A stretch of DNA of 64,000 nt from Gracilinanus agilis (Eukaryota). The notes beneath the pieces are model-generated. The model saw nothing but the letters and a program-made list of their open reading frames with translations, was not told the DNA's origin and made no database searches. Below, piece by piece: positions 6,071-62,964 of the stretch (its first letter is position 1; every line of letters starts with the position of its first letter). Both the position numbers and the translations under genes were made by a program. The stretch is from positions 321,912,732 to 321,976,731 of the forward strand of contig NC_058131.1 of NCBI RefSeq assembly GCF_016433145.1, in the 5' to 3' direction.

Positions 6071-9000
6071 CAACCTCTCTTTCTGTCATTGAGGGTATCA
6101 CCATCCTTCCTATATACAACAGGGGCATCCATGACTCCAACTTATAGACAGAATGTAGATTACTATACTTAGAATAAATGCAATAGATTAGTATAGACAG
6201 AGTAAATGCAAAATAAATAGTCACTAAATACAGGATGGATAGGGAGGGTACTAGCTGCTAAGAAGTTGAGAAAAGGCTATGCATAGAAGGTACTGTTTGA
6301 GCCAAGTCTTGAAAGGAAAGAGGGATTCTAAAGGAGACAGAAAAGGGTTGGATTTGGTGGGGAGATTTCCTTATTGTCAGACACTGGGGGAAAAGAGGAG
6401 AAAATGCAGAATGATGTCATGAAATTTGCAGATAAATTGAAGGGAAAGCAAGAGAGTTCATATTGAGTGCCCTCAGTGTTTTCAGTAATGTAAGAGACAA
6501 GGTCCTATTAATAGTAATAATAGCTAGCATTTATATAGGATTTTAAAGTTTACAAAGTTCTTTACAAATATTTTATCCAACAATCCTGGATAATATATAT
6601 TATTATTCTTGTTTTACAAATGAGGAAACTCTTTGGCTTTCCCAGAGTAACTTAACTAGTAAGTGTATTTGAACTTAAAACTTCCTCACTCAGGACCAGT
6701 GCTCTATTGATAATGGGAAGCTCTCTTATCTATAAAAGTAACCCATTCCATTGTTAGGCAACTGTAACTCTTGGGAACTTAATCTTTTTACTGAAGTGAA
6801 ATCTGGCTCCTTACAACTTCTCTTCCTATTTCCCATTTCTCCTAGTTTTGGCCTCTGGGACTAAGCAGAACAAGTCTTGCCATTCTTCCCCTTTTCTAAT
6901 ATTTGAAGTCATTCAGCACAGAGATGACAGAGGTATAGTGGAAAGAAGGCTAGATTTGGAATTAAAGAAGTTCACTTAGAATTTTGGCTCTTCTGTTACC
7001 TTACTGGGTGACTTTAGTGTAACAGTGGTAGATACTATTCACTGAGCTGGTGAGTAGGCAGGTAGGTGCCTTTCACCCTTACTCTACCCAGACTTTTTGT
7101 GCATAGAGCTACTTTTCCTCTAGAGCAGGACTCCTCTAGCCAATTCTTTGATCCCACTTCTGCCTCCTCTGAGAAGTGGTTTTCCTTTCAAGTCAACCCT
7201 TCCACTGTTGCATTTGCCCACTTCAATAATTTTGCCCTCTTGACTCTCAGTTTTGTCCTTCTTTCCATAAATCCATAGAATGAGAGAAGCTAGCTTTTTA
7301 AACTAAATTAGTCCCAATTCCAGGCCTAAGGTCAGGGGAAACAGATGAGATGAAGTTGGATTAAGGAGGACCCAGTCATTTCTAACCCAGGTACCTGTCT
7401 CTAGCATTATGATCTCCTAGCTGGCACTAGAGTAGGCATAGTCAAAACAGAGCTACATTGAGCAAATGACTTCTCTCTGAATGCCAGTTTTCTCTTCTGA
7501 AACACAAAGGGGTTGAACTAGATGATCTTTGAGATCCCTTTTAACTCTAAATCCTATGATGCTTGTTCTTTCTCCCTTCTCCCCTCCAAAAAAAAAAAAA
7601 AAGAAAGAAAGGAAAGGAAAACCCTCTAGGACAGTGTTGGTGAACCTTTCAGAGACTGTGTGCCCAAACTGCTCCCTCAAGCTACCTGTGAGCCCCCTGT
7701 ATTACCACAGACAGAGGAGGGAGGAAGGGCTTGCATTAGGCTGCTGGGCAGAGGGGCAGGGAATGTGGAAAATGTCTTTGGGCTTTGTGGAAAGGGTAAA
7801 TGGAGCAGCCTCCTCCAACATTCAGGGGCACACATACTATTGGTTCGCCAGCACAACTCTAGGCTCAATTTTTGAAACATAACTCAAAGCAACTACCAGG
7901 GATAACATTCTCTTCCCTAGAATCATGCCTCTCAGTGACTGTCTTTATTGTTTTATGAACACCGATTCTTAGGAAGTCCCAGACTATCCTAATCTTAGGC
8001 TAGGGCTAAGGGGAAAAGGATATAGCTTAAAGTGGAGCTTGAAGTGACTGCTGGCTTCCAAGGGTGACTGAGGGAAGTGAGAGTTACCTTCTTTGAGTTC
8101 TCTTTCAACAGGAGGCACCTTCTGGCAAAGGAAAGATACAGGACACATAACAGGAACATAACCATTAAAGAGAAGAGAATAGGCTAGTCCCCCTATCCAG
8201 CTCACAGGCCTTGCTTTCCTCTTTCTTTTTGTTTTTTTAATAAGAACTCACATTTATTGTGGGACCTTGATTCCAAGACTCTTCGTATGAGTTGAAAATC
8301 ATGCATAATAGCAAACCCCTTTATTTAATAAGTATTTCTTATATGAACATATCTAGGCCCTTTGTGAATTTTCTTAGGCTTATTAGAGCTACCAGCATCA
8401 CTACTCTTGTACATGAAACCATTATTAATAACTAAATAATGTTAATGAAATGAAGAGAAGCACTGCTCTGACATGGACATACTCTATACAAGAGAGACCT
8501 CTGGACAAAGATGGATTCAGGAGTTAATGTTTGGAGCAAAACAATGTAATGACTTACACATATGCTTCTCAAAGTGAATGAATTTAGTGTGTAATTAAAC
8601 ATTTTTATTTTCTGTATTTTTGTCTTAATTTTTTCAGTTGCTAATCCATGTACCTAAATTCATGTGTGTTACCTCTGTGTAAAACAAGGTTCTACTGCAT
8701 ATATAATTTTTAAGGATTATAGAACATTTTCCCCACAACAATCATATGAGATAGCTCCTACAAGTTTTATTATTTTCATTTTACAGGTGAAAAAACTGAG
8801 CCTCAGAGACATCATATGATGCCTAGTAAAGGTCAACTGGGCTTTGAACCCAAGTCTCTTGATTACAAGTTCAGTTAGCGCTCTTTCTACTACATTATAC
8901 TGCCTCTCAGAATCAAAGAATCATAAGCTAAAGAGTTTGAAGGGATCACAGAAGTTATCTAGTTCAAGGCATTTTATTCCTGTCCCCTTTTTTGGAACAA

Positions 9001-9419: not shown

Positions 9420-10900
9420 TACAAAGTAGTCTAAAGTAATTTAAAGAGGGAAAGAGAGTGCTAATAACTTGGCCATTAGGAAAAGCTTCTTATAGGATGA
9501 GGTACCTGAACATGAAAGATGCTAGGGATTCCATGAAGCAGGAGAAAAGAAAGATTGTATTCCAGGTAAATGATAAAATGAGGGATTTATATTTTCTTTT
9601 AGTAGCAATAGAGAGTCATTGGAGAATTTTGAGTAAGAGGATGACATGGTCAGGTATGTATTTTAGGAATAGCAATCTGGCAGCTAAAAGAAATGGAGTG
9701 GGGGAAGATGGAAGGCCAGGAGACCAGTTAAAAGACCATTGAAATTGTTCAGGAAAGAAATTATTAAATGAACTTGGTTATAGTCTATGTGAATGTGAGA
9801 GTTATTACTGAGGTAGAATTGATATGACATGGGGCAGCTAGGTGGCATAGTGGAGAGAACACCAGGTCTGAAGTCAGAAGGACCTGGTTTCAAATCAGAC
9901 TGTAGACACTTTCTAGGTATATGACCCTGGGCAAGTCACTTAACTCCATTTACCTAGTCTTGCCCTTCTATTTTAGAGATATTTCTAAAACAGAAAGAAA
10001 AAAGATTTTAAAAAACTGATATGAAATGGCAACTGACAGGGCTCAACAATTGAGAGAAAGGGAAGAATAATCAAGAATGACTTCAAAAGGTCTTGGGCCT
10101 GAATGACTGGAATAATGGTTGTACCATCAAAAGAAATGAAGAAAGTTGGAGGATAGTTGTTTTTTTTTTGTTTGTTTTTGTTTTTGTTTTTTTAAGTTGG
10201 GATAGGGAGCAAGATAATAAGCTCAATTTTTGGACATATTCAAGCTGAGATGCCTGTGGGACATCCAGGTGAAGAGGTTTGTCAGGTAGAGGTAATATGG
10301 GACTAGAGTTTAGGAAAGAGACTAGGGCTGAATATATAGATTTTAGTCACCTGCCTAGAGGTGCTAATTGAACACTTGGAAGTTGATGATACAGTATCAC
10401 CAAGTGAGGATGTAAAGACAGAAGAGAAAAGTGCCCAGGACAGGGCCTTGGAAGACATCCACACTTGATGGTTAGAAGAGAAAAGCAGCAAAGGAAACCA
10501 AGGAGTGTATCATATTAGTAGGAACTAAGAGAGATCAGTGTCATAGAAACCAAGAGAGGAGACTGACAGTATTAGAACCTGTAAAGAAGTTAAATAGAAA
10601 GAAAAGGTCATAGAATTTAGCAGCTAAGATACTATTGGGATCCTTTGAGAAAACAGTTGCCAAAGGTGGTATGGTCAGAATCCAGAACAAAAAGGGTTGC
10701 GAAATGAGTGGGAGGTTAGAAAATAGAGGCCCTAAATATAGATAATACTTTCTAGGATATTTGGCTGTGAGTGGGGGAAGAGATATAGGATGACAATTTA
10801 ATATAATAATAGACTTAAATTAAGTTTTTCTTAATGAACAGTTAGGAGGACCTAAATGTGTTTGTAGCTATCAGGGAAGGAGCTAGTAAATAAGGACATA
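9420..10900 (-). mobile_element. Long degenerate L2 fragment
   Basis: Purine-rich antisense L2 motifs (ttggacatattcaagctgagatgcctgtgggacatccagg); boundaries approximate. Confidence 0.65.
9831..10013 (+). mobile_element. CORE-SINE inserted into L2
   Basis: Head ggggcagctaggtggcatagtgg; 14-bp TSD aattgatatgacat / aactgatatgaaat. Confidence 0.85.
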
Positions 10901-42979: not shown

Positions 42980-43545
42980 ACAAGGAACTTTTGAATATAA
43001 CATGTTAGAATTTCATTTAACAAAGGGACCTTTGAACATGGAATGTTAGAGCCAGGAAGGAACCTACAACACAGAATGTCAGGGCTGGATGGGACCTTAG
43101 GACATAGACCAAGGGAGCTAGAAGGGTCTTTAGGACATAGAATATGGGAGTTGGAAGGGACCTTAGGACATAGAATATGGGAGCTAGAAGGGACCTTAGG
43201 ACACAGAATATTGGAGCTAGAAGGGACCTTAGGACATAGAATATTGGCATTGGAAGGGACCTTAGGACATAGACTATGAGAGCCAAAATGGACTTTAGGA
43301 CATAGGATATTGGAGCTAGAAGGGACCTTAGGGCATAGAATATTGGAGCTAGAAGGGACCTTAGGGCATAGAATTTTGGAGTTGGAAGGGACTTTAGGAC
43401 ATAAAATATTGGAGATAGAAGGGGCCTTAGGACATAGACTATGAGAGCCAAAATGGACTTTAGGACATAGGATATTGGAGCTAGAAGGAACCTTAGGACA
43501 TAGAATATTGGAGCTGAAAGGAGCCTTAGGATGTAGAATGTTGGG
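42980..43545. repeat. 33-bp minisatellite (ggagctagaagggaccttaggacatagaatatt) with a 165-bp higher-order repeat
   Basis: 11-aa periodic ORFs on both strands; variant unit gactatgagagccaaaatgg at 43272 and 43437. Confidence 0.95.
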
Positions 43546-50850: not shown

Positions 50851-53286
50851 TATGAGCATTTATTAAGTTCTAAGTACCAATTCCTCTGCTAAATACTGAA
50901 GACACAAAGGAAAAACAAGAGTTCTTGCCCTCCAGGAAAGGGATTATTATCTTCAATTTACTAAGACTCTGGGCTTTCTAGGGTTACACAGCTCATGAGT
51001 GTCAGAATTTAACCCATATCTTCTGTCTTCAAGCCTCTATCTACTACAGTTCAATATACTGAGCAATTATTGATGATGAACTATACAAATGTGAGGCTTG
51101 GAAGGGTTAAATGATTTGTCTAGAGTAACAGGGCCAGGAAGTGACAGAGGCAGGATTGGAACTTAGGATTCAAAAACACATCTTCTAACTCCAGGTCCAT
51201 TCAGTACATTCTTAGGCCAATCCCTAGTCTTTGTATTAGGCAAAGTAGTAAGTCAAAAGTTCTCTGAATTTCTGAAGAGGAAAGCACCATGAATATACGT
51301 TTGCTCTTCCTCTCTCTCCCTTCTGTTCTTAGATAAGTAGTTATGACTGTGGTTAAGTATGGACATGGCCTTCCAGCTTTGTGCATTGCTCTCTGATCCC
51401 TTTCTACTCTTAGAATTCCTATGGAATTATAAATTTCCCTTTATCTGCAAAATCTTCTTTTGATCCTTCCATCATCTCTTTTCATGAACAGAAAACTGGG
51501 ATCTCTCATATATCTTTTGCCACCCTTTCCGTGGGAGGCATGGCTCCCTTTCCCAAGTCCCACTCACTAAGCCAGGAGACAGAGTCAGGAAATTCACTTC
51601 TCCCCACTTCCAAACCCATTCCTCTGTCACCATTTTCCAGTAACTTTTCCTCTTGAAATGTTCATGAAATCTAATACTGCCACCCTCATTCCCCATTCTT
51701 GTTAACATCTCTTTCAGGGGAATTATGGGATCCTGTCCTGAAGGTAAGAGAAATGGGAAATCTCTCAAGTTCTTAGGGTATGTGGGACATTGGGACAGAC
51801 TCCAGGGGATGGGCAAAGGCATATATCCTCAGAGTCATCCAGCAGAGGGAGGATAAGCCACAGGAGCTCCAGGACACTGCAACTCACAGCCGAGAGTGTC
51901 CAGGCTAGGGGAATATTATTGCATTGGAGTTGGGGTGGGAAGGACCCAGGATTAAGAGGTGGAAAGAATTAAACAGTTAAAAGACCTGAATCGAATCCCA
52001 ACTCTGGAACTTTTCAGCTGTGTAAGCTTGAGCAAACCACTTCCCTTTATCTGGCATCAGTTTCCTCATCTATAAAATATGGACAATGATATTGGCATTC
52101 CTTCCCCTAGGAAAGTGCTTTAAGAACTGGGGAGGGTTATAGACATGGGAAGTCTATATTGCATATCAATTGTATCCCTGGCTTGTGGCCAAAATGTGAC
52201 AAAATATCTGTCTACAGTATCATTCTTCTCCATCCCAACCCTAATTTCAGGTGTTCAGGGTCTTTCCAGTTTCCTTGCCATTCTTACTGGCTCTCTAAGT
52301 CATAATCAATTCATTCACAAAGAAGATATCAGGAAGTGATGGAGAGGTGCTTCTGAAGGGGTTTTCTAGTTGCATAAGGGACTAGTTCCATTGTCAATCC
52401 CAGGAAGCAAGAGATCTCAAGATAATAAGTGCTCACATTTATATAGCACTTTAAGGTTTACATAATGCTTGCTGTGGGTTCTCATTTGATCAGGGTGGAG
52501 GCCCAACTAGGGGTCACAAAAGGATAACTGGGATGTGACATTCCCAGGAGAATAGAACTTCATATTCCCATCCACTTCAGACATTTACCAAGCAACATGA
52601 GGCAGTGTAGTATAACATATAGTTGTGTGATGCAGGTAAGTCACATATTCTTCAGTTTTCTCTGTGAAACGAAGGGGTTAGATTTAATGGCCTCTAAGGT
52701 CCCTTCCAAGAGCTAAAGTTATGGCTTACTCACTGCCCCAATGTGGAAAACAAATAAATAGTTCCTGCTCTATGAGAACCCATTATTGTAAAAGGAGGAA
52801 GAAGGGAGTGCCGAGTATATACATAAATATAATACAAAGAAGAGTAAAATATAAGTAGAGCAGAGCTCTCAAAATACTCTAAGAAATTTAGAGATCTTTC
52901 AGCTGGGGAGAGAAAGAGGGAAGAGATATTCAAGGAAGGATCCACAAAGGAAGTAGCAGCTGAATTGAGCTTTGAAGGATGGGAAGGACTTCACTAGAGG
53001 AAAACAAAGGAGGGGGAGAAGAGCATTCCAAGCTTGAGAAGAAAGTGGGAGCAAAGGCCATAGGCTCATAGGATTGATTTAGTCCAATAGCCTCAATTTT
53101 ATAGATGAGGAAACTAATTGTCTAGAAAGGGGAATTAGCTCAAAGAAGGCTAGCAAAAGTTCTGGGTAGGGCCAGGGAATTGATGCATTCTTTCTTGGTT
53201 CCCTCCTTCCTTTCTTTCTTTCTCTCTCTCTCTCCTTTTCTTCCTTTCTTCCTTTCTTCCTTCCTTCCTTTCTTTCTTCCTTCCTT

Positions 53287-53634
53287 NNNNNNNNNNNNNN
53301 NNNNNNNNNNNNNNNNNNNNNNNNNNNNNNNNNNNNNNNNNNNNNNNNNNNNNNNNNNNNNNNNNNNNNNNNNNNNNNNNNNNNNNNNNNNNNNNNNNNN
53401 NNNNNNNNNNNNNNNNNNNNNNNNNNNNNNNNNNNNNNNNNNNNNNNNNNNNNNNNNNNNNNNNNNNNNNNNNNNNNNNNNNNNNNNNNNNNNNNNNNNN
53501 NNNNNNNNNNNNNNNNNNNNNNNNNNNNNNNNNNNNNNNNNNNNNNNNNNNNNNNNNNNNNNNNNNNNNNNNNNNNNNNNNNNNNNNNNNNNNNNNNNNN
53601 NNNNNNNNNNNNNNNNNNNNNNNNNNNNNNNNNN
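53287..53634. other. Assembly gap (348 N) inside a (CCTT)n microsatellite
   Basis: Run of N flanked by TTCC/CCTT repeats on both sides. Confidence 1.
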
Positions 53635-53648
53635 TGTATAAGAGACAG
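53635..53648 (+). other. Tn5/Nextera mosaic-end adapter remnant
   Basis: TGTATAAGAGACAG equals the 3' 14 nt of the mosaic end and sits right at the gap edge. Confidence 0.92.
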
Positions 53649-54465
53649 CCTTCCTTCCTTCCTTCCTTCCTTCCTTCCTTCCTTCCTTCCTTCCTTCCTT
53701 CCTTCTTCTCTTTCTTCCCTTACCTTCTGCCTTAGGATCAAAATAAAGTGTTGGTCCCAAGGCAGGAGAATGGTAAGGACTAGGTAATTGGGATTAAGTA
53801 CTAGGAGTTACATCTTATATCTAAATGCTCAGCTGGTTAAGGCTATGGTTAATCCATTTAAAAAAAACCAAACAAATAAAGCAACTAAGTAGTGAGCCAG
53901 TCCCCATTGTGGCGGAGACCTCAGCCTCCAAATAACACTAATAAAAACAGCTCACTTTTCTAGAGCACTTTGGGGTTTACAAAGCTTCATAATAAGCCTG
54001 TGAGGTAGGTAGTGCAAGGATTCTATTCCCATTTTACAGAGGAGGAAGCTGAGGCTCAGAGAGGTGAAATGAATTGCCCAGGTTCATGAAACTAATAACA
54101 TTTTAGAGGTGAAATTTAAATCCTGATTTTCTGACTGTTAGACTAGGCTCTTGCCATTCCATCATGATGTTGCGGAAGCAATAATCACAGGACCAAGAGC
54201 GGGAATGGATTTTAGAGATAATCTAGTCTAACTTCATCAGATCACAGATGATGATCCTGAAGCCAGGAGAACTTTAGTGACTTGTCTCACTTCACAGAAA
54301 TGGCTAATGAATAAAATGAGGATTTGAACCCAGGTCATCTGACTCCAAGTCCAGCGCTCTTAACACTACAGTAGACTACTGCTGCCCTATGCTCAAGTTT
54401 AGGTACACTGTAGCATCCAGAGGAAGGGAAAGAAAGGAAAGAGGGAAGCTGGGGTAGGGTGGAGG

Positions 54466-54757
54466 TTACGCGGGAATGTGGGCCACAATGGCTGGATCCT
54501 CCTCATCCTCATCAGAGAAGCTGATGTGTAGGATCGTGTCGTTGGCCCCAGATGGGAAGGTTGTGGGTGAGAGGTGCCACTGAGTGGCCCCAGCTTCAGC
54601 CTCCTCCAGGGTGTCACTGCTCACTGAGTCTGGGGATCCAAAGGATGATGGTTGTCCTGGGTCAGTCTCCGAGTCCAGACTGAGGGAAGTCTTGGTCAGC
54701 CTCTTCTTGAGGGTGGGGGGTGGAGGATGAAGCTTGGGAATGGACGGTGATAGCAAC
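54466..54757 (-). CDS. NOS1AP-like: Terminal coding exon (phase 2 start, TAA stop) with a [11 protein letters not shown] motif and an acidic tail
   Basis: Acceptor ctcctgtactgttcccag|G restores AGG (Arg), then 96 open codons [19 protein letters not shown]...[20 protein letters not shown]-stop. The 292-nt length fits the phase. Confidence 0.82.
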
Positions 54758-56346
54758 CTGGGAACAGTACAGGAGATTGGGAAGGGAGGAGAGTGAAAAG
54801 GATACAGGACCTGGAGTCAGGATTATTCCTGCATTCTTTATACTATCTCTCTGAACCTGGTTCCTCCTCTAAAAAAAGGGATAATCACATCAGAGTCCTT
54901 GTGAAGAAAGGGCTCACTTGGGGGAAGACATGTCTGGAGGCAGAGGGAAGATCTAAAGCTTTCCCAGTTGTCTTGTCTTTTCTATGAGCTGCCACAGAGC
55001 CAGGACATAGGACATCAGCTGTAGGAATTCACAGGAGGGCTCCTTTGTCATTGCTCCCATTTGTTTAACTCAAACCCAACAGAGCCAGGAGGCTCACTAT
55101 TGTGGGCTCTGCTTCCCTTTCTGAAGTGTAGGGGAGGACACAGGATTCAGGGCCATCTTAGAGAAGTACAAGAATGTTGTAAAAAGGGTACTAGCTCTGG
55201 AGTCAGAGGACTTTGGTTTGAATCCCAGTTCTGAAGAGGTTAGGCAAGTCACTTTCTCTCTTCAGAGCTTCCTTTCTACATTTAAAAAATGAGAGGAGTT
55301 AGGCTATACCTACTCTAAGGTTCTTTCCAGTTCTAAATCCTATGATCCTATTAATCCTAATAACCCTTTACAATTATTTGGTGCGTTGAAAGATCTCAGA
55401 AAAGTCTTTTCATATGTATTTCATTAGATCCTCAAAAATAAATCTGTGAAAAGGATAGTCTATATTTTATGGCCCACGATTTACAGAAAGGAAAACTGAG
55501 GCTTAGAGAGGGGAGTCATTTGCCCCAAATCATATAGTGCAGTGTTGGTGAAGTATTGGCATGCCTGCCAAGCTGGCCCTGGGGGAGCTGCTCTGTTCTC
55601 CCTCTTCCCAGTGCCTGAAGACATTTTTTGCATCCCCAGCCCCTCTGTCCAGCTACCCAAAGGCAGCACTTCCTCCCTCCACTCTCTGGGGTAATGTGTG
55701 GGGCTCACAGGCATCTTGAAGTTGCAGTTTGGGCACACAAACTTGAAAACCTTCACTAATGCTGATATAGGATTGAGTTAGGGCAGAACCAGGATAGGAA
55801 TTTAGATCTCCTGACTCCTAATTTATCACTCTTTGCACTATAATATACTGCCCCCAGGATCTAAAAAAGGTCCCACACCCCAGTGGGTGTGTGTATGTTT
55901 CTGGGACTGTGAGGAAGAAGTTACTTTGTAGCTTCAGAGGAGAGGGCAGGGAGGTGGTGGGGTCACTGACCTATCCTTATTGGTTGTGAGGCTGGAGGGA
56001 CTCCCTCCTTGGTCAGTCTCCTCGGATTCGTCTTCCCTCTGACTGAGTCCAGGAAGATGCCTACTTCTCAAAGTCAGGCTAACCTTTCCCACAGTGTCCT
56101 GGCTCCTTTGGACTCTGGGACCCAGGGCAGAGGCCCGATCCAAGCTAAGGCTAAAGCTCTGCAGAGACTGGCCACCTGTTTGGGAAGAAGGGAAAGAGAC
56201 AACCATGAACTCTTTGATAAGAGACTATTGCTAAAGATTCCTAGACAGGTCCCCAGAGATTGGCAGCAGCCATCTCCTGTACCTCCTCCCCAAGTTCCAA
56301 AACTCTTTGTTCTCAGATCCCTTCTAACTCTAATATTCTACATTTT

Positions 56347-56394
<48 letters not shown>

Positions 56395-59300
56395 CTAAAA
56401 TCCTATGTCATCAATAATGACAGGTCAGCATCTTTTTGTTCTAAGCCTCCTTCCATCTCTAATATTCTGTTATTTGTTCTTTAATTCCTCAACAAGGATG
56501 GGTCAGGGTCTCCATTGTTTTCCCTAGGACTCCCTCCAGGAGATAAAACTGTAGGGCCCCCTCCTTTTGAACCTGGAGAAGAGAACTCCAGCCAGATATT
56601 ATGAAACTGTGTATCCTTAGAGCCTTTCTACATCTCATTTTCTATATTCTATGAAAGGAACAAAATTAGAGTATCAGTATTAACCAGTTCAAAATCTCAG
56701 TGTAATTTAGTACTATATATAAAACTAAAGGTATTTCACAAGATGCACTATACCAGGAGCCTAGGATGTTTCTCTAGTTGTCCTTTACCTTTAATATCTT
56801 GGATCCTTTCATCATTAGATCAATATCATCTCCTCTTCCTGTCTTCACTTGGGCCACATGAAACTCTCAGCCTTCCCCATCCCCAAACCAGTAGGTCAGT
56901 GCCAGCCCCCTTCTCTTTTTGATCCACATCTTCTCACCACCAGATCCCTATCTTGTCCTGAACCCTCCTTACCATTAGGCCGGGCCCAAGCTCTTTCCTC
57001 TAGTTCTCTTAGCTGCCGCCCCAGCAGTGCCATGTGCTGGAGCAAGTCTCTGTTGGTCAGTAGCAACTGGCGGATCCTGGCCTGGGCCTCCACTCTGGCT
57101 GCTGTCTCTGCTGCAAGCTGGTCTGTGAGGAGCTGTACCTGGAGAATTCCCATTACCACACCATTTGTGGCAATTCTTGACCTCCAATCCTACCACCTAA
57201 TTCTCATTGTGAAGGAGTTACCAAATCAGGATTACCCAATCAGAAGCAACCGTAGGGGATATTTTGATCCAAACTGGCTCTGGCAACAAAACCCCTCTCC
57301 AACATTGCTAGCAACCTCTATTTAAGACATACAGTAATAAGAAGCTCACTGCTTCTCAGGTTGTCCCATTTATGAGCATCTCTTATTGTCAAGAAGGCTT
57401 CATATCAAACCAAAATCTGCCTCTTTGTAATTTGAACCCGTTACTTCTAGTTCTTCCCTCTCAGACAGGGTGGCATAGTGGACAATGTGCTGGTCTCGGA
57501 GTCAGGAAGACTTGAATTCAAATTTGACCTCAGACTCTTACTTACTGTTTGTACCTAAGCAAGTCACTTAGTTCCTGTTTTCTATAAATTAGATAAATGA
57601 GTAAAACACTTAGCACAAAATAGGTATTACAATGCTTATTTCTTCTTTTCCCTGAAGCCAAGCTTAATAAATCTAGTCCCTCTTCTATAAGATAGCTCTT
57701 CAAATTTTTGAAAACAGTTATCATGTGTCTTTCTCTGCACGAAGTCTTTTCTAGGCTAAACTTCCCTGTGAGGTTGTTTTAATAGACAAGTTTGTACTCC
57801 CCAAATTGGTGGTTTAGCCTTTCCTCTGCCCCCTAGAACAGCATTATAATATAAGCTCTGAGAAGATAGAGACCATGTTTTTAATAAAAATATGCTTCCC
57901 CCATACCTAGCATAGGACTTTCTGCATAGCAGATACATGATAAATATTTGTCTAATGAAAAAATGAGTGCTAGTAAATAAACCTCCTTTGAAAAAAACCT
58001 ACTCTATTTGTACAATAAGAAGGGAACAGATTGAGAAAAGAATATCTGTAGTAAATATGTCAGAGAAAGGCCTGGCTTCCAGAGCCTATAAATGCTTATT
58101 GAATGACTGATCTCAAAGAATGAATACACATCTCTAAAAGTAATATGCTCCCTAGTGCATATTATGTAATGATCAAAGAAGACAAACAGAAAACCTATGA
58201 AGGATGAGATAAAAAAGTTAATAACACATGAAAAAAATGTTTAATCAACAAATTAACCAATAAGCGTTTAGTAAACATTGGCTATGTGCCAGAGGTTATG
58301 CTAAATGCAGGAAATATAAGTAAAAAAAATTTTAAAAGTCTTTATTTACTCAAATGGGAGACAACAAAAAAGATAAATATAAAGTGGAGGGAAAGTAAAT
58401 TCAGAGGGTTAAGCAGTAGCAACTGGGAGAACCAGAAAAGGTCTCCTGGAAGGGATCTTATAGGAATGTAGGCATTCTATAAGGCAGAGATAAAGAGGGA
58501 GAGCATTCCAGGTAAGGCTGGATAGTAGTGCAAAGGTATAGGTAGAAGATGGAGTATGAGAGGACTGCTCTGGTTTCATTGTAGACTAAATGGAGAACAG
58601 CAGAATGTAGGAAGACATAAGGTTGACAGGGGTCAGATTATAAAGAGTTACTGAGCAGGAGTGGATGTAGTCAGACATATACTTTAAGCATTTGAAAAAA
58701 GGATGAAATGGAGAAGAGAGAGATTTGAGGCAGGATGCCACATAGGAGATTACTGTAATTGTCCAGGACAGAGGTGATGATGCCTGACCTATGGTGCTGA
58801 TTCTGTGAGTGGAAAGAAGAGAACATATATGAAAGATGTCACAGAGAAAGAAATTACAAGGTTTGGCAATAGATTAGATTTGTGGGATGAGAGAGAGGAG
58901 TCAAGAATGATGTCCAAGGTTGTGAATCTGGGTGAAAGGAAGGATGGTGATCCCTTCAACAACAGTAGTGAAGTTCAGATGAACGGTGATTTGGAGTAAG
59001 AGAGAATGGGGGAGGAGAGACAAATTTTGGACATTTTGAGCTTAAGATGCCTTCAGGAATTCTAGTTTGAGATGAGTTCAATGAGTAGTTGATGCTGTGA
59101 GGTTAATTCAGGAGAAAGACTGAGGCTGGACAGAAATCTAGGACTTATCTGATAGAGATTCTAACCGAATCCATAAATAAGAATACCAAGTTAGAAAGTG
59201 TAGAGATAAATAAAAGAGAAAGTGTAGAGATAAATAAAAGAGGGACTGAACTTTAGTGGGCATCCAAAGTTAGTGGCTGTGCCATGGATAAAAGTCCAGT

Positions 59301-62300: not shown

Positions 62301-62964
62301 CAGAAAGAAAAATATAAGTTCTGTTTCAAGTGACTTAAAAAAAAGGAATGATATTGTTTGGTGTTCTCCAAGGCAACTGAGAGTATCTCATTTGAGCCTT
62401 ACAAAAGATCTACTAAAGTCACACATAAATAGTACACCCCTTTTACAGATGGTAAATATTCTATAACTCTTATTTTCCTGAGCCTCAGAGAAATAATCAT
62501 GATTTGTTCAAGGTCATGCACCTAGTAAATGAAGAAAGCCAAGATTTGAATCCAGTTCTCTTGCCTCCGTATTCAGTTGCTTCCTTGGGAAAGGAAGGGA
62601 TGGAACTATGGTGAGACCAAAAGAATCTAAGGAAATTAATGACTTTGGGAGTACAGATATAGAATGCTGACAGTGGAACACTGTAGCCACTCTGAAAGCC
62701 ACCCAGACAAACCCTGCCCTTGGGGAGCTCTCTTTAAGGAAAAAAAGTAGGAAAAATGATTACCTGGGCAGTGGCTACCTGAGCCTGCTGCCATTGCTGG
62801 AGAAGCTGGTGATGAAGGAGCCGGGTACAATGTGGAGTCAAGAGTGGTGTTACTGGCATGACTGATGACTTGGGGGAGGATTCCAGGCTTCTTGAGGGTG
62901 ACCATGGCTGGGCACTGGCAGGGTGGGCAGAGCCAGATCCAACATCCTGGGCACAGCGGCATAC
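54466..62964 (-). CDS. NOS1AP-like: 3' part (4 coding exons) of a NOS1AP/CAPON-family adaptor gene, probably a paralog; 5' PTB exons lie outside the window
   Basis: Spliced frame reads ...[17 protein letters not shown]|[47 protein letters not shown]..., matching the recalled NOS1AP coiled coil [59 protein letters not shown]. All three introns are GT-AG with compatible phases (0, 1, 2). TAA stop at 54468-54466. Confidence 0.9.
55971..56175 (-). CDS. NOS1AP-like: NOS1AP-like exon (205 nt, phase 1 to 2)
   Basis: Strong acceptor ctctttcccttcttcccaaacag|GT, donor GATAG|GTCAGT. The frame continues from the previous exon and contains [16 protein letters not shown] and DESEETD. Confidence 0.82.
56350..56393. 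repeat. (GT)n microsatellite in the NOS1AP-like intron
   Basis: Direct reading. Confidence 0.97.
56973..57138 (-). CDS. NOS1AP-like: NOS1AP-like coiled-coil exon (166 nt, phase 0 to 1)
   Basis: Acceptor ttctccag|GTACAG, donor AATG|GTAAGG. Encodes [55 protein letters not shown]; about 32/50 identical to human NOS1AP as recalled. Confidence 0.93.
58230..59560 (-). mobile_element. Long L2 fragment (intronic)
   Basis: Minus [30 protein letters not shown] and L2 3' motifs; includes a 24-bp tandem duplication at 59193-59242. Confidence 0.7.
59900..60070 (+). mobile_element. CR1/L3 3' fragment
   Basis: ttttcaaatatctgaagaactgtc..gacttgttctgttt..ttcctgacaatcagagttgtcc. Confidence 0.65.
61811..62015. 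mobile_element. Second copy of the 43735 MITE family, nested in a CORE-SINE (61695-62130)
   Basis: Ends CAGTGGTGTGAAC / TGATACCTCTG; shared internal tatctatgtt..aatatt(t/c)cccaatta. Confidence 0.75.
62764..62964 (-). CDS. NOS1AP-like: NOS1AP-like exon: Ser/Pro-rich linker plus Gln-rich start of the coiled coil
   Basis: Donor GCCCAG|GTAATC at 62763 (phase 0). In-frame acceptor is either ccaag|GTA (62964) or cccag|GAT (62946). Encodes [29 protein letters not shown], similar to recalled [29 protein letters not shown]. Confidence 0.85.

What the first reader, a model, noticed from the sequence alone, without database searches (positions are those of the whole stretch)
54466..56175. Tail appears to fuse a NOS1AP last-exon-like segment with a C1orf226-like exon in one reading frame
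Seen: exon 56175-55971 has [16 protein letters not shown] and REDESEETD; the final exon starts R|[19 protein letters not shown]. Recalled: the NOS1AP canonical last exon has SQDSLLEITFRSGALPVL and NTDESEERD, and the neighbouring C1orf226, which forms the NOS1APc read-through, has [23 protein letters not shown]. Inference: both motif sets lie in one spliced ORF here, suggesting NOS1AP and C1orf226 descend from one ancestral gene and that T-x-R-S-x-x-L-P, DESEE and P-[KR]-L-x-PPPP-x-x-[KR][KR]-R are ancient functional short motifs.
Basis: partly seen in the sequence, partly recalled or inferred. Interest (0 to 1): 0.7.

Follow-up and report, generated by a model that had tools for sequence, protein, structure and literature searches.

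The report
NOS1AP-like gene with built-in C1orf226 tail

Summary
On the minus strand, exon 56175-55971 and terminal exon 54757-54466 have canonical splice sites and join in frame. The junction splits an Arg codon as AG|G. A 1764-nt transcript-like contig from a close relative skips exactly this 1213-nt intron.

The gene is the already annotated 'carboxyl-terminal PDZ ligand of nNOS protein-like', found in marsupials, monotremes, sauropsids, amphibians and gar. It lies next to TTLL11 in bird and gar.

The terminal exon is C1orf226-like (DUF4628):
- The gar orthologue passes Pfam's DUF4628 threshold (E 1.4e-7).
- The tetrapod tail profile aligns to the gar tail at 99.3% probability.
- 13 of 14 tails hit DUF4628 as the top Pfam family, in register.

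TxRSxxLP occurs only in marsupials. 'DESEE' is a degenerate form of the ancestral [RK]VEGSE[VE].

The intron here is phase 2. The human NOS1AP-C1orf226 junction is phase 1, so the NOS1AP/C1orf226 boundary lies inside the penultimate exon, not at this intron.

The single-ancestral-gene idea is supported. The NOS1AP-C1orf226 read-through product itself is already published.

The parts
62779..62964 (-). Upstream coding exon (VCRCAQDVG...QQWQQAQ), 186 nt, phase 0 at both ends
   Evidence: Read. It matches Sarcophilus P0001 and Monodelphis P0007. Donor is CAG|gtagcc.
56973..57138 (-). Coiled-coil exon ([35 protein letters not shown]...), 166 nt, ends in phase 1 like human NOS1AP exon 9 (c.1105)
   Evidence: It is conserved across the family. 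It is covered by spliced contigs. The human phase comes from the coordinates in PMC12660744.
55971..56175 (-). Penultimate exon, 205 nt. It is a shortened, fast-evolving version of the 117-119 aa exon of gar and bird. It contains [21 protein letters not shown] and REDESEETD, and ends AG| in phase 2.
   Evidence: No Pfam or PDB similarity. Covered by spliced contigs.
54758..55970 (-). Last intron (1213 nt, GT..AG), phase 2 inside an Arg codon. It holds a high-copy interspersed repeat at about 55528-55809.
   Evidence: Joint. The same position and phase occur in bird L001, bonefish L002 and gar L003.
54466..54757 (-). Terminal exon: 96 codons plus stop, the DUF4628/C1orf226-like tail
54700..54741 (-). 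Motif island 1: [14 protein letters not shown]
   Evidence: Invariant I, P, K, PPP and R in 19 sequences. Present in about 100 of 120 family members. Matches DUF4628 profile positions 110-126. pLDDT is about 80.
54496..54537 (-). Motif island 2: [14 protein letters not shown]
   Evidence: Invariant T, L, H, I, S, S. It corresponds to DUF4628 profile positions of about 220-250 in P0131, P0137 and P0004. pLDDT is 74.

Best explanation
This is the 3' end of the TTLL11-linked paralogue of NOS1AP, annotated by NCBI as 'carboxyl-terminal PDZ ligand of nNOS protein-like'. Its constitutive C-terminus is a shortened DUF4628 (C1orf226-type) tail. It lacks the EIAV-type PDZ ligand of canonical NOS1AP. 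The protein therefore has, built in, the architecture that the NOS1AP locus produces only by 'intergenic' splicing into C1orf226 (the NOS1APc isoform): a PTB domain, a coiled coil and a DUF4628 tail. The tail is predicted to be disordered. It most likely works as a carrier of two short docking motifs: a proline-rich and basic motif (IPKLxPPPPxxRKR) and an acidic, Ser-rich C-terminal motif (TxLHISFSEDE). This is inferred by analogy with NOS1APc, which localises to the membrane and cell junctions in complexes with Scribble and KANK1. Because both paralogous loci have the order PTB gene then DUF4628, the ancestral vertebrate gene most likely carried both parts. On this reading C1orf226 is the detached 3' part of NOS1AP. 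Shown here: the exon structure, the spliced junction, motif conservation, the DUF4628 relationship and TTLL11 synteny in bird and gar. Inferred: the motif functions, ohnology with NOS1AP and the direction of evolutionary change.
For: Splicing: one search shows a 1764-nt contig across three exons, and the joint appears in two studies. Family identity: searches return named orthologues in marsupials, monotremes, birds, turtles, crocodilians, lizards and amphibians. Their PID domain scores E 1e-29 to 1e-34. DUF4628 relationship: gar P0119 scores 31.9 bits against a cutoff of 26, E 1.4e-7, residues 445-643 on profile 87-249. Its gene is also labelled PID+DUF4628 in the collection. The tetrapod tail profile A1 aligns to the gar tail by hhalign at probability 99.3%, E 1.9e-20, over 161 columns. 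13 of 14 tails hit DUF4628 as the top Pfam family, best E 0.0011, in register. The window tail itself scores E 0.16 on profile 110-126. Gene structure: the exon layout and the phase-2 AG|G or CG|G Arg intron are conserved in bird, bonefish and gar. Synteny: TTLL11 lies head-to-head upstream in both bird and gar. Disorder: AlphaFold gives mean pLDDT 60.5 and pTM 0.15, with no secondary structure other than one 6-residue helix and higher confidence only at the two motif islands. No PDZ ligand: the protein ends HIPA, and read-through of the donor ends CPLL after 15 codons. Literature: the NOS1AP-C1orf226 intergenic product is real, predominant in kidney and disease-relevant (PMC12660744). The C1orf226 part contributes to KANK1 binding, and NOS1APc sits at cell junctions (PMC11607453). 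The EIAV ligand is a vertebrate gain in NOS1AP (PMC3276551).
Against: The window tail alone is below Pfam's threshold (12 bits against 26). A profile word search with the tails found no protein named C1orf226. That search only sees proteins of 108-343 aa that share exact words with the query. No genuine NOS1AP or C1orf226 sequence could be fetched. The link to mammalian C1orf226 therefore rests on the Pfam model and is transitive through gar. The marsupial tail is about half the length of the other vertebrate tails (96 aa against about 150-200), so part of the domain has been lost. The ohnologue relationship to NOS1AP was not tested by a tree. The motif functions are untested.
Confidence: 0.8

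Rival explanations
1. The penultimate exon as a whole is the counterpart of the canonical NOS1AP last exon, including its distal NTDESEERD segment. The intron at the Arg codon is the old NOS1AP|C1orf226 boundary. TxRSxxLP and DESEE are ancient functional motifs.
For: The exon follows the exon-9-like coiled-coil exon in the same phase. The recalled strings resemble each other. The acidic S/E patch sits at a constant place in all orthologues.
Against: TxRSxxLP is found only in marsupials. DESEE varies within marsupials and aligns to VEGSE[VE] elsewhere. In human and mouse the junction to C1orf226 lies 153 nt into exon 10 in phase 1. The intron here is phase 2. In gar the DUF4628 match starts about 22 residues before this intron, and in the caecilian tail P0123 about 5 residues before it (DER), so the C1orf226-like part begins inside the penultimate exon. 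There is no profile similarity for this exon.
Confidence: 0.12
2. The resemblance to C1orf226 is convergent, low-complexity similarity (a proline run plus basic residues) and not homology. On this view the paralogue's tail is unrelated to DUF4628.
For: The window tail scores only 12 bits against DUF4628. The matched stretch is 17 residues rich in P, K and R. No named C1orf226 was found.
Against: Two separate motif islands occur in the same order and at matching profile positions (110-126 and about 220-250). The gar orthologue matches 163 profile positions above Pfam's curated threshold. It aligns with the tetrapod tails end to end. DUF4628 is the top family for 13 of 14 tails out of 24,736 models.
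Confidence: 0.04
3. The fusion is secondary. C1orf226-like and NOS1AP-like genes were originally separate neighbours, and each locus later evolved joining by splicing independently.
For: Mammalian C1orf226 has its own promoter and transcripts (PMC12660744). In bonefish the annotators called the front and the tail as two genes.
Against: In gar, bird and marsupial there is no separate tail gene. The DUF4628-like region straddles an ordinary internal intron, and its first part shares an exon with NOS1AP-like sequence. The bonefish split falls inside an open exon, so it looks like an annotation artefact. Independent fusion at two paralogous loci is less parsimonious than a single ancestral gene.
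Confidence: 0.04

Closest known systems
NOS1APc, the NOS1AP-C1orf226 intergenic splice product (Richier et al. 2010 lineage of work, from my own knowledge; PMC12660744; PMC11607453)
   Same: It has a PTB domain, a coiled-coil exon ending in phase 1, then a tail with the DER...P[KR]LxPPPPxxRKR motif and no PDZ ligand. The tail belongs to DUF4628.
   Different: Here the arrangement is constitutive within one ordinary gene at another locus, next to TTLL11 in bird and gar. There is no alternative EIAV-ending exon. The exon before the tail is 205 nt and ends in phase 2, against 153 nt and phase 1 in human and mouse. Only one tail exon follows instead of two C1orf226 coding exons. The marsupial tail is only 96 aa.
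C1orf226 / Gm7694 (Pfam PF15429, DUF4628)
   Same: The tail shares the two motif islands in the same order. The gar orthologue of this gene passes the family threshold.
   Different: The window's tail is below threshold. It lacks counterparts of profile positions 1-86 and most of the linker between the motifs. It is not a free-standing gene.
Canonical NOS1AP / CAPON
   Same: The orthologous proteins have the PTB domain and the coiled coil. Exon phases match at the end of the exon-9 equivalent.
   Different: There is no C-terminal PDZ ligand. Marsupials end HIPA, sauropsids RVPA or RVPS, and frogs KNGN. The name 'PDZ ligand of nNOS-like' is therefore probably a misnomer for this paralogue.

Membership tests
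NOS1AP/CAPON family | N-terminal PTB/PID domain | tested here: met
   The PTB exons lie outside the window. The orthologous full-length models have PF00640 at E 1e-22 to 1e-30: P0001 (86% identical to the window over the terminal exon), P0006 and P0007 (99% over the terminal exon).
NOS1AP/CAPON family | Coiled-coil exon after the Q-rich region, ending in phase 1 (human exon 9, c.1105) | tested here: met
   Exon 57138-56973 ends AAT G|gt. The human phase is derived from c.1105+5 and c.1258+1 in PMC12660744. No genuine NOS1AP sequence was available for alignment.
NOS1AP/CAPON family | C-terminal PDZ ligand (EIAV) that binds nNOS | tested here: not met
   The spliced ORF ends ...AHIPA. Read-through of the donor ends ...CPLL. 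Orthologues end RVPA, RVPS, KNGN or EKD.
DUF4628 / C1orf226 (PF15429) | Score above Pfam's gathering threshold (26 bits) | tested here: not met
   The window tail scores 12 bits, E 0.16. The best tetrapod tail reaches E 0.0011. The syntenic gar orthologue does pass, at 31.9 bits, E 1.4e-7.
DUF4628 / C1orf226 (PF15429) | DER...P[KR]LxPPPPxx[KR][KR]R motif at profile positions of about 102-127 | tested here: met
   Window residues 5-21 match profile 110-126. P0123 residues 4-29 match 102-127.
DUF4628 / C1orf226 (PF15429) | Second conserved block near the C-terminus (profile positions of about 220-250) | tested here: inconclusive
   The LHISFSEDE block of P0131, P0137, P0004 and gar falls on profile positions of about 220-250. 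The window's own block was not reported by hmmscan.
NOS1APc-type intergenic junction | Donor 153 nt into the exon after the coiled-coil exon, phase 1 | tested here: not met
   The exon here is 205 nt and ends in phase 2. In bird it is 358 nt and in gar 346 nt, both ending in phase 2.
C1orf226 gene structure | Intron between coding exons 1 and 2 at the Arg of DER, phase 2 | not testable with these tools
   No C1orf226 locus could be fetched, and the papers give no coordinates for this boundary.

The most novel reading that the evidence does not exclude
PTB, coiled coil and DUF4628 in one gene is the ancestral vertebrate NOS1AP architecture. The TTLL11-linked ohnologue keeps it unchanged. On this reading the textbook CAPON form, with its nNOS-binding EIAV end, is a derived read-through isoform of one paralogue. 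C1orf226 is not an independent gene but the detached 3' exons of NOS1AP. The two invariant islands (IPKLxPPPPxxRKR and TxLHISFSEDE) are then the functional core of the kidney-disease-relevant NOS1APc tail.
Probability: 0.6. Interest if true: 0.5.

Novelty: new member of a known kind. Interest (0 to 1): 0.4.

Why it matters
The NOS1AP-C1orf226 'intergenic' isoform was shown in 2025 to be the predominant kidney form and to be relevant to nephrotic syndrome. Its C1orf226 part has no known functional elements. A paralogue that carries the same tail constitutively across more than 400 million years (my estimate, from gar to marsupials) gives an evolutionary filter. Only two short islands are invariant, and they become direct targets for mutagenesis and interaction mapping. 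It also argues that C1orf226 should be treated as part of NOS1AP in variant interpretation, and that the '-like' paralogue is misnamed as a PDZ ligand.

Tried and rejected
- **Word search with the terminal exon alone:** blank, as expected from the tool's length window.
- **Profile word search with the tail alignment:** it found only tail fragments of the same family and no named C1orf226.
- **Pfam and PDB searches of the penultimate exon and its family alignment:** nothing relevant.
- **PDB search with the full orthologue:** only PTB domains of other adaptors, and no NOS1AP entry from which to take a sequence.
- **ESM Atlas look-up of the gar tail:** no usable hit.
- **Supplement of PMC12660744:** not held as text.
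- **Fetching loci:** gar isoform X2 is not on record, and the Macrotis locus came without DNA. No codon-level dN/dS among marsupials could therefore be computed.
- **Read-through ORF in bonefish ending in a PDZ ligand:** none; a stop follows the donor directly.
- **Joined model:**, the spliced model was never joined. Each exon was searched separately by reference.
- **Restricted material:** no N stretch was filled, and no human contig was handled.
- **Considered and rejected readings:** that the junction is an unused prediction (rejected), and that gar P0119 is NOS1AP proper (rejected by its TTLL11 neighbour).

Full report
**What is in the window**

The gene lies on the minus strand. I read four coding exons.
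- Exon 62964-62779 is phase 0 at both ends.
- Exon 57138-56973 is the coiled-coil exon. It is 166 nt and ends AAT G|gtaagg in phase 1.
- Exon 56175-55971 is 205 nt. It follows the acceptor aaacag| and ends GAT AG|gtcagt in phase 2.
- The terminal exon is 54757-54466. It follows ttcccag|. Its first G completes the Arg codon, and 96 codons and a stop follow.

If the donor at 55971 is read through, the ORF stops after 15 codons at ...CPLL. There is therefore no alternative long terminal exon here.

**Is the junction used?**

Yes. I laid contigs of four public runs of a close relative (about 95-97% alike) on 54400-57200.
- One 1764-nt contig lies on 54463-54755, 55969-56171 and 56969-57142.
- It skips 1213 nt. 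With the stated +2 shift this is 54758-55970, GT..AG on the minus strand.
- It also skips 797 nt, the length of the predicted intron 56176-56972.
- It runs on about 1.08 kb beyond the coiled-coil exon, on its upstream side.
- A second study shows both joints.

The aligner placed the 797-nt joint four bases away from the GT-AG position. The skipped length, and therefore the frame, agree with the prediction. The runs are labelled RNA only by guess, but an intron-less contig is itself the evidence.

**What gene is it?**

The exhaustive search with the terminal exon found one strong hit, P0001. It is 512 aa and 86% identical over its last 96 residues. A word search with P0001 returned a large family.
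- NCBI names the family 'carboxyl-terminal PDZ ligand of neuronal nitric oxide synthase protein-like'.
- Members come from Sarcophilus, Macrotis, Monodelphis, platypus, echidna, many birds, turtles, crocodilians, lizards, frogs, a caecilian and spotted gar.
- The window tail is 99% identical to the Monodelphis model P0007.
- All full-length members have an N-terminal PID domain, at E 1e-22 to 1e-34.

I agree with that reading.

**Is the final exon C1orf226-like?**

On its own the window tail gives only a sub-threshold DUF4628 match: E 0.16, 12 bits, residues 5-21 on profile positions 110-126. Three further results make the relationship solid.
- The gar protein P0119 carries PID plus DUF4628 above Pfam's curated threshold. 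It scores 31.9 bits against 26, E 1.4e-7, with residues 445-643 on profile 87-249.
- A profile of 14 tetrapod tails (A1) aligns with the gar tail over 161 columns, at hhalign probability 99.3% and E 1.9e-20.
- 13 of the 14 tails hit DUF4628 as their top Pfam family, always in register, with a best E of 0.0011. Fish fragments do the same.

The gar gene is the true orthologue of the tetrapod gene and not NOS1AP proper. In gar (L003) and in the parrot (L001) the gene lies head-to-head with TTLL11.

**Conserved anatomy**

In gar, parrot and the window the layout is the same.
- The coiled-coil exon ends in phase 1.
- One penultimate exon follows: 346 nt in gar, 358 nt in parrot and 205 nt here.
- That exon ends in phase 2 inside an Arg codon (CG|G or AG|G).
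- The Arg lies four to five residues before IPKL.
- Bonefish has the same acceptor.

Two islands are invariant in 19 sequences from teleosts to marsupials.
- IPKLxPPPPxx[RK][RK]R, at window 54741-54700.
- TxLHIS[FL]S[ED][ED][ED], at window 54537-54496.

AlphaFold on this alignment gives mean pLDDT 60.5 and pTM 0.15. The only secondary structure is a 6-residue helix. Confidence is raised only at the two islands. This fits a disordered tail that carries short linear motifs.

**What is not supported**

The penultimate exon of marsupials is a shortened, rapidly changing version of the 117-119 aa exon of other vertebrates.
- 'REDESEETD' aligns with the conserved [RK]VEGSE[VE]. It is KEDSKENE in Sarcophilus.
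- '[10 protein letters not shown]' has no counterpart outside marsupials.
- The exon and its family profile match no Pfam family or PDB chain.

The published human and mouse junction to C1orf226 lies 153 nt into NOS1AP exon 10. It falls after the first base of codon 420, so it is phase 1 (c.1258+1; PMC12660744).
- The window's phase-2 intron cannot be the same intron.
- In gar the DUF4628 match starts at GSE, about 22 residues before this intron. In the caecilian tail P0123 it starts at DER. The C1orf226-like part therefore starts inside the penultimate exon.
- The most likely counterpart of the window's last intron is the intron between the two C1orf226 coding exons. I could not test this.

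**Evolutionary reading**

Two paralogous loci both have a PTB gene followed by DUF4628.
- The NOS1AP/C1orf226 locus joins the two parts by regulated splicing (PMC12660744, PMC11607453).
- The TTLL11-linked locus joins them constitutively.

From my own knowledge, human TTLL11 is at 9q33, in a region paralogous to 1q23 where NOS1AP lies. The simplest history is one ancestral gene that carried both parts. The EIAV PDZ ligand of NOS1AP has been described as a vertebrate gain (PMC3276551), which fits a derived canonical isoform. I found no paper that discusses the paralogue or this inference. A tree and outgroup tails are still needed.

**Function (inferred)**

This inference is by analogy with NOS1APc. 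NOS1APc localises to membranes and cell junctions, and its C1orf226 part adds to KANK1 binding (PMC11607453). The tail probably provides docking sites.
- The proline-rich, basic island is a candidate ligand for a proline-recognition domain, or a basic membrane or nuclear-targeting patch.
- The acidic Ser-rich end is a candidate site for an acidophilic kinase, or a binding site.

None of this was tested.

**Limits**

The link to mammalian C1orf226 rests on the Pfam model.

Noticed in passing
window 55528-55809 (intron), and an ORF-level look-alike at about 7529-7882: An interspersed repeat with contig depth in the thousands in the laid runs and many false joints. The ORFs across both copies share a similar peptide (…CPNC..K.PVSP..Y…), so both belong to one repeat family.
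   Followed up: partly
window 43023-43544: A tandem array of a 33-nt unit, 15.8 copies, 79% matches. It gives a 252-aa repetitive ORF (ILCPKVPSSSN...) on the minus strand. It is probably a minisatellite and not a gene.
   Followed up: partly
window 56350-56394: A (GT)n/(CA)n microsatellite, 22.5 copies, in the intron upstream of the penultimate exon. Reads appear to be cut there.
   Followed up: no
window about 770-1000 and about 53290-53640: Runs of N (gaps or masked sequence), flanked at 53188-53286 and 53649-53718 by CCTT/TTCTTCCT simple repeats.
   Followed up: no
L002 1-27370 (bonefish): The annotators split the orthologous gene into a 421-aa PID gene and a 208-aa 'hypothetical protein'. 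The break falls inside an exon that is open from 9740 to 10084, so this mimics the NOS1AP/C1orf226 split and looks like an annotation artefact.
   Followed up: partly
L003 78913-78972 (gar): An optional 20-21 codon mini-exon between the coiled-coil exon and the penultimate exon distinguishes isoform X1 (667 aa) from X2 (646 aa). No counterpart was looked for in the window's 56176-56972 intron.
   Followed up: no
P0008 (Sarcophilus isoform X3, 423 aa): An annotated isoform ends ...KDRQEN instead of entering the DUF4628 exon, which suggests an alternative 3' end after the penultimate exon in at least one marsupial.
   Followed up: no
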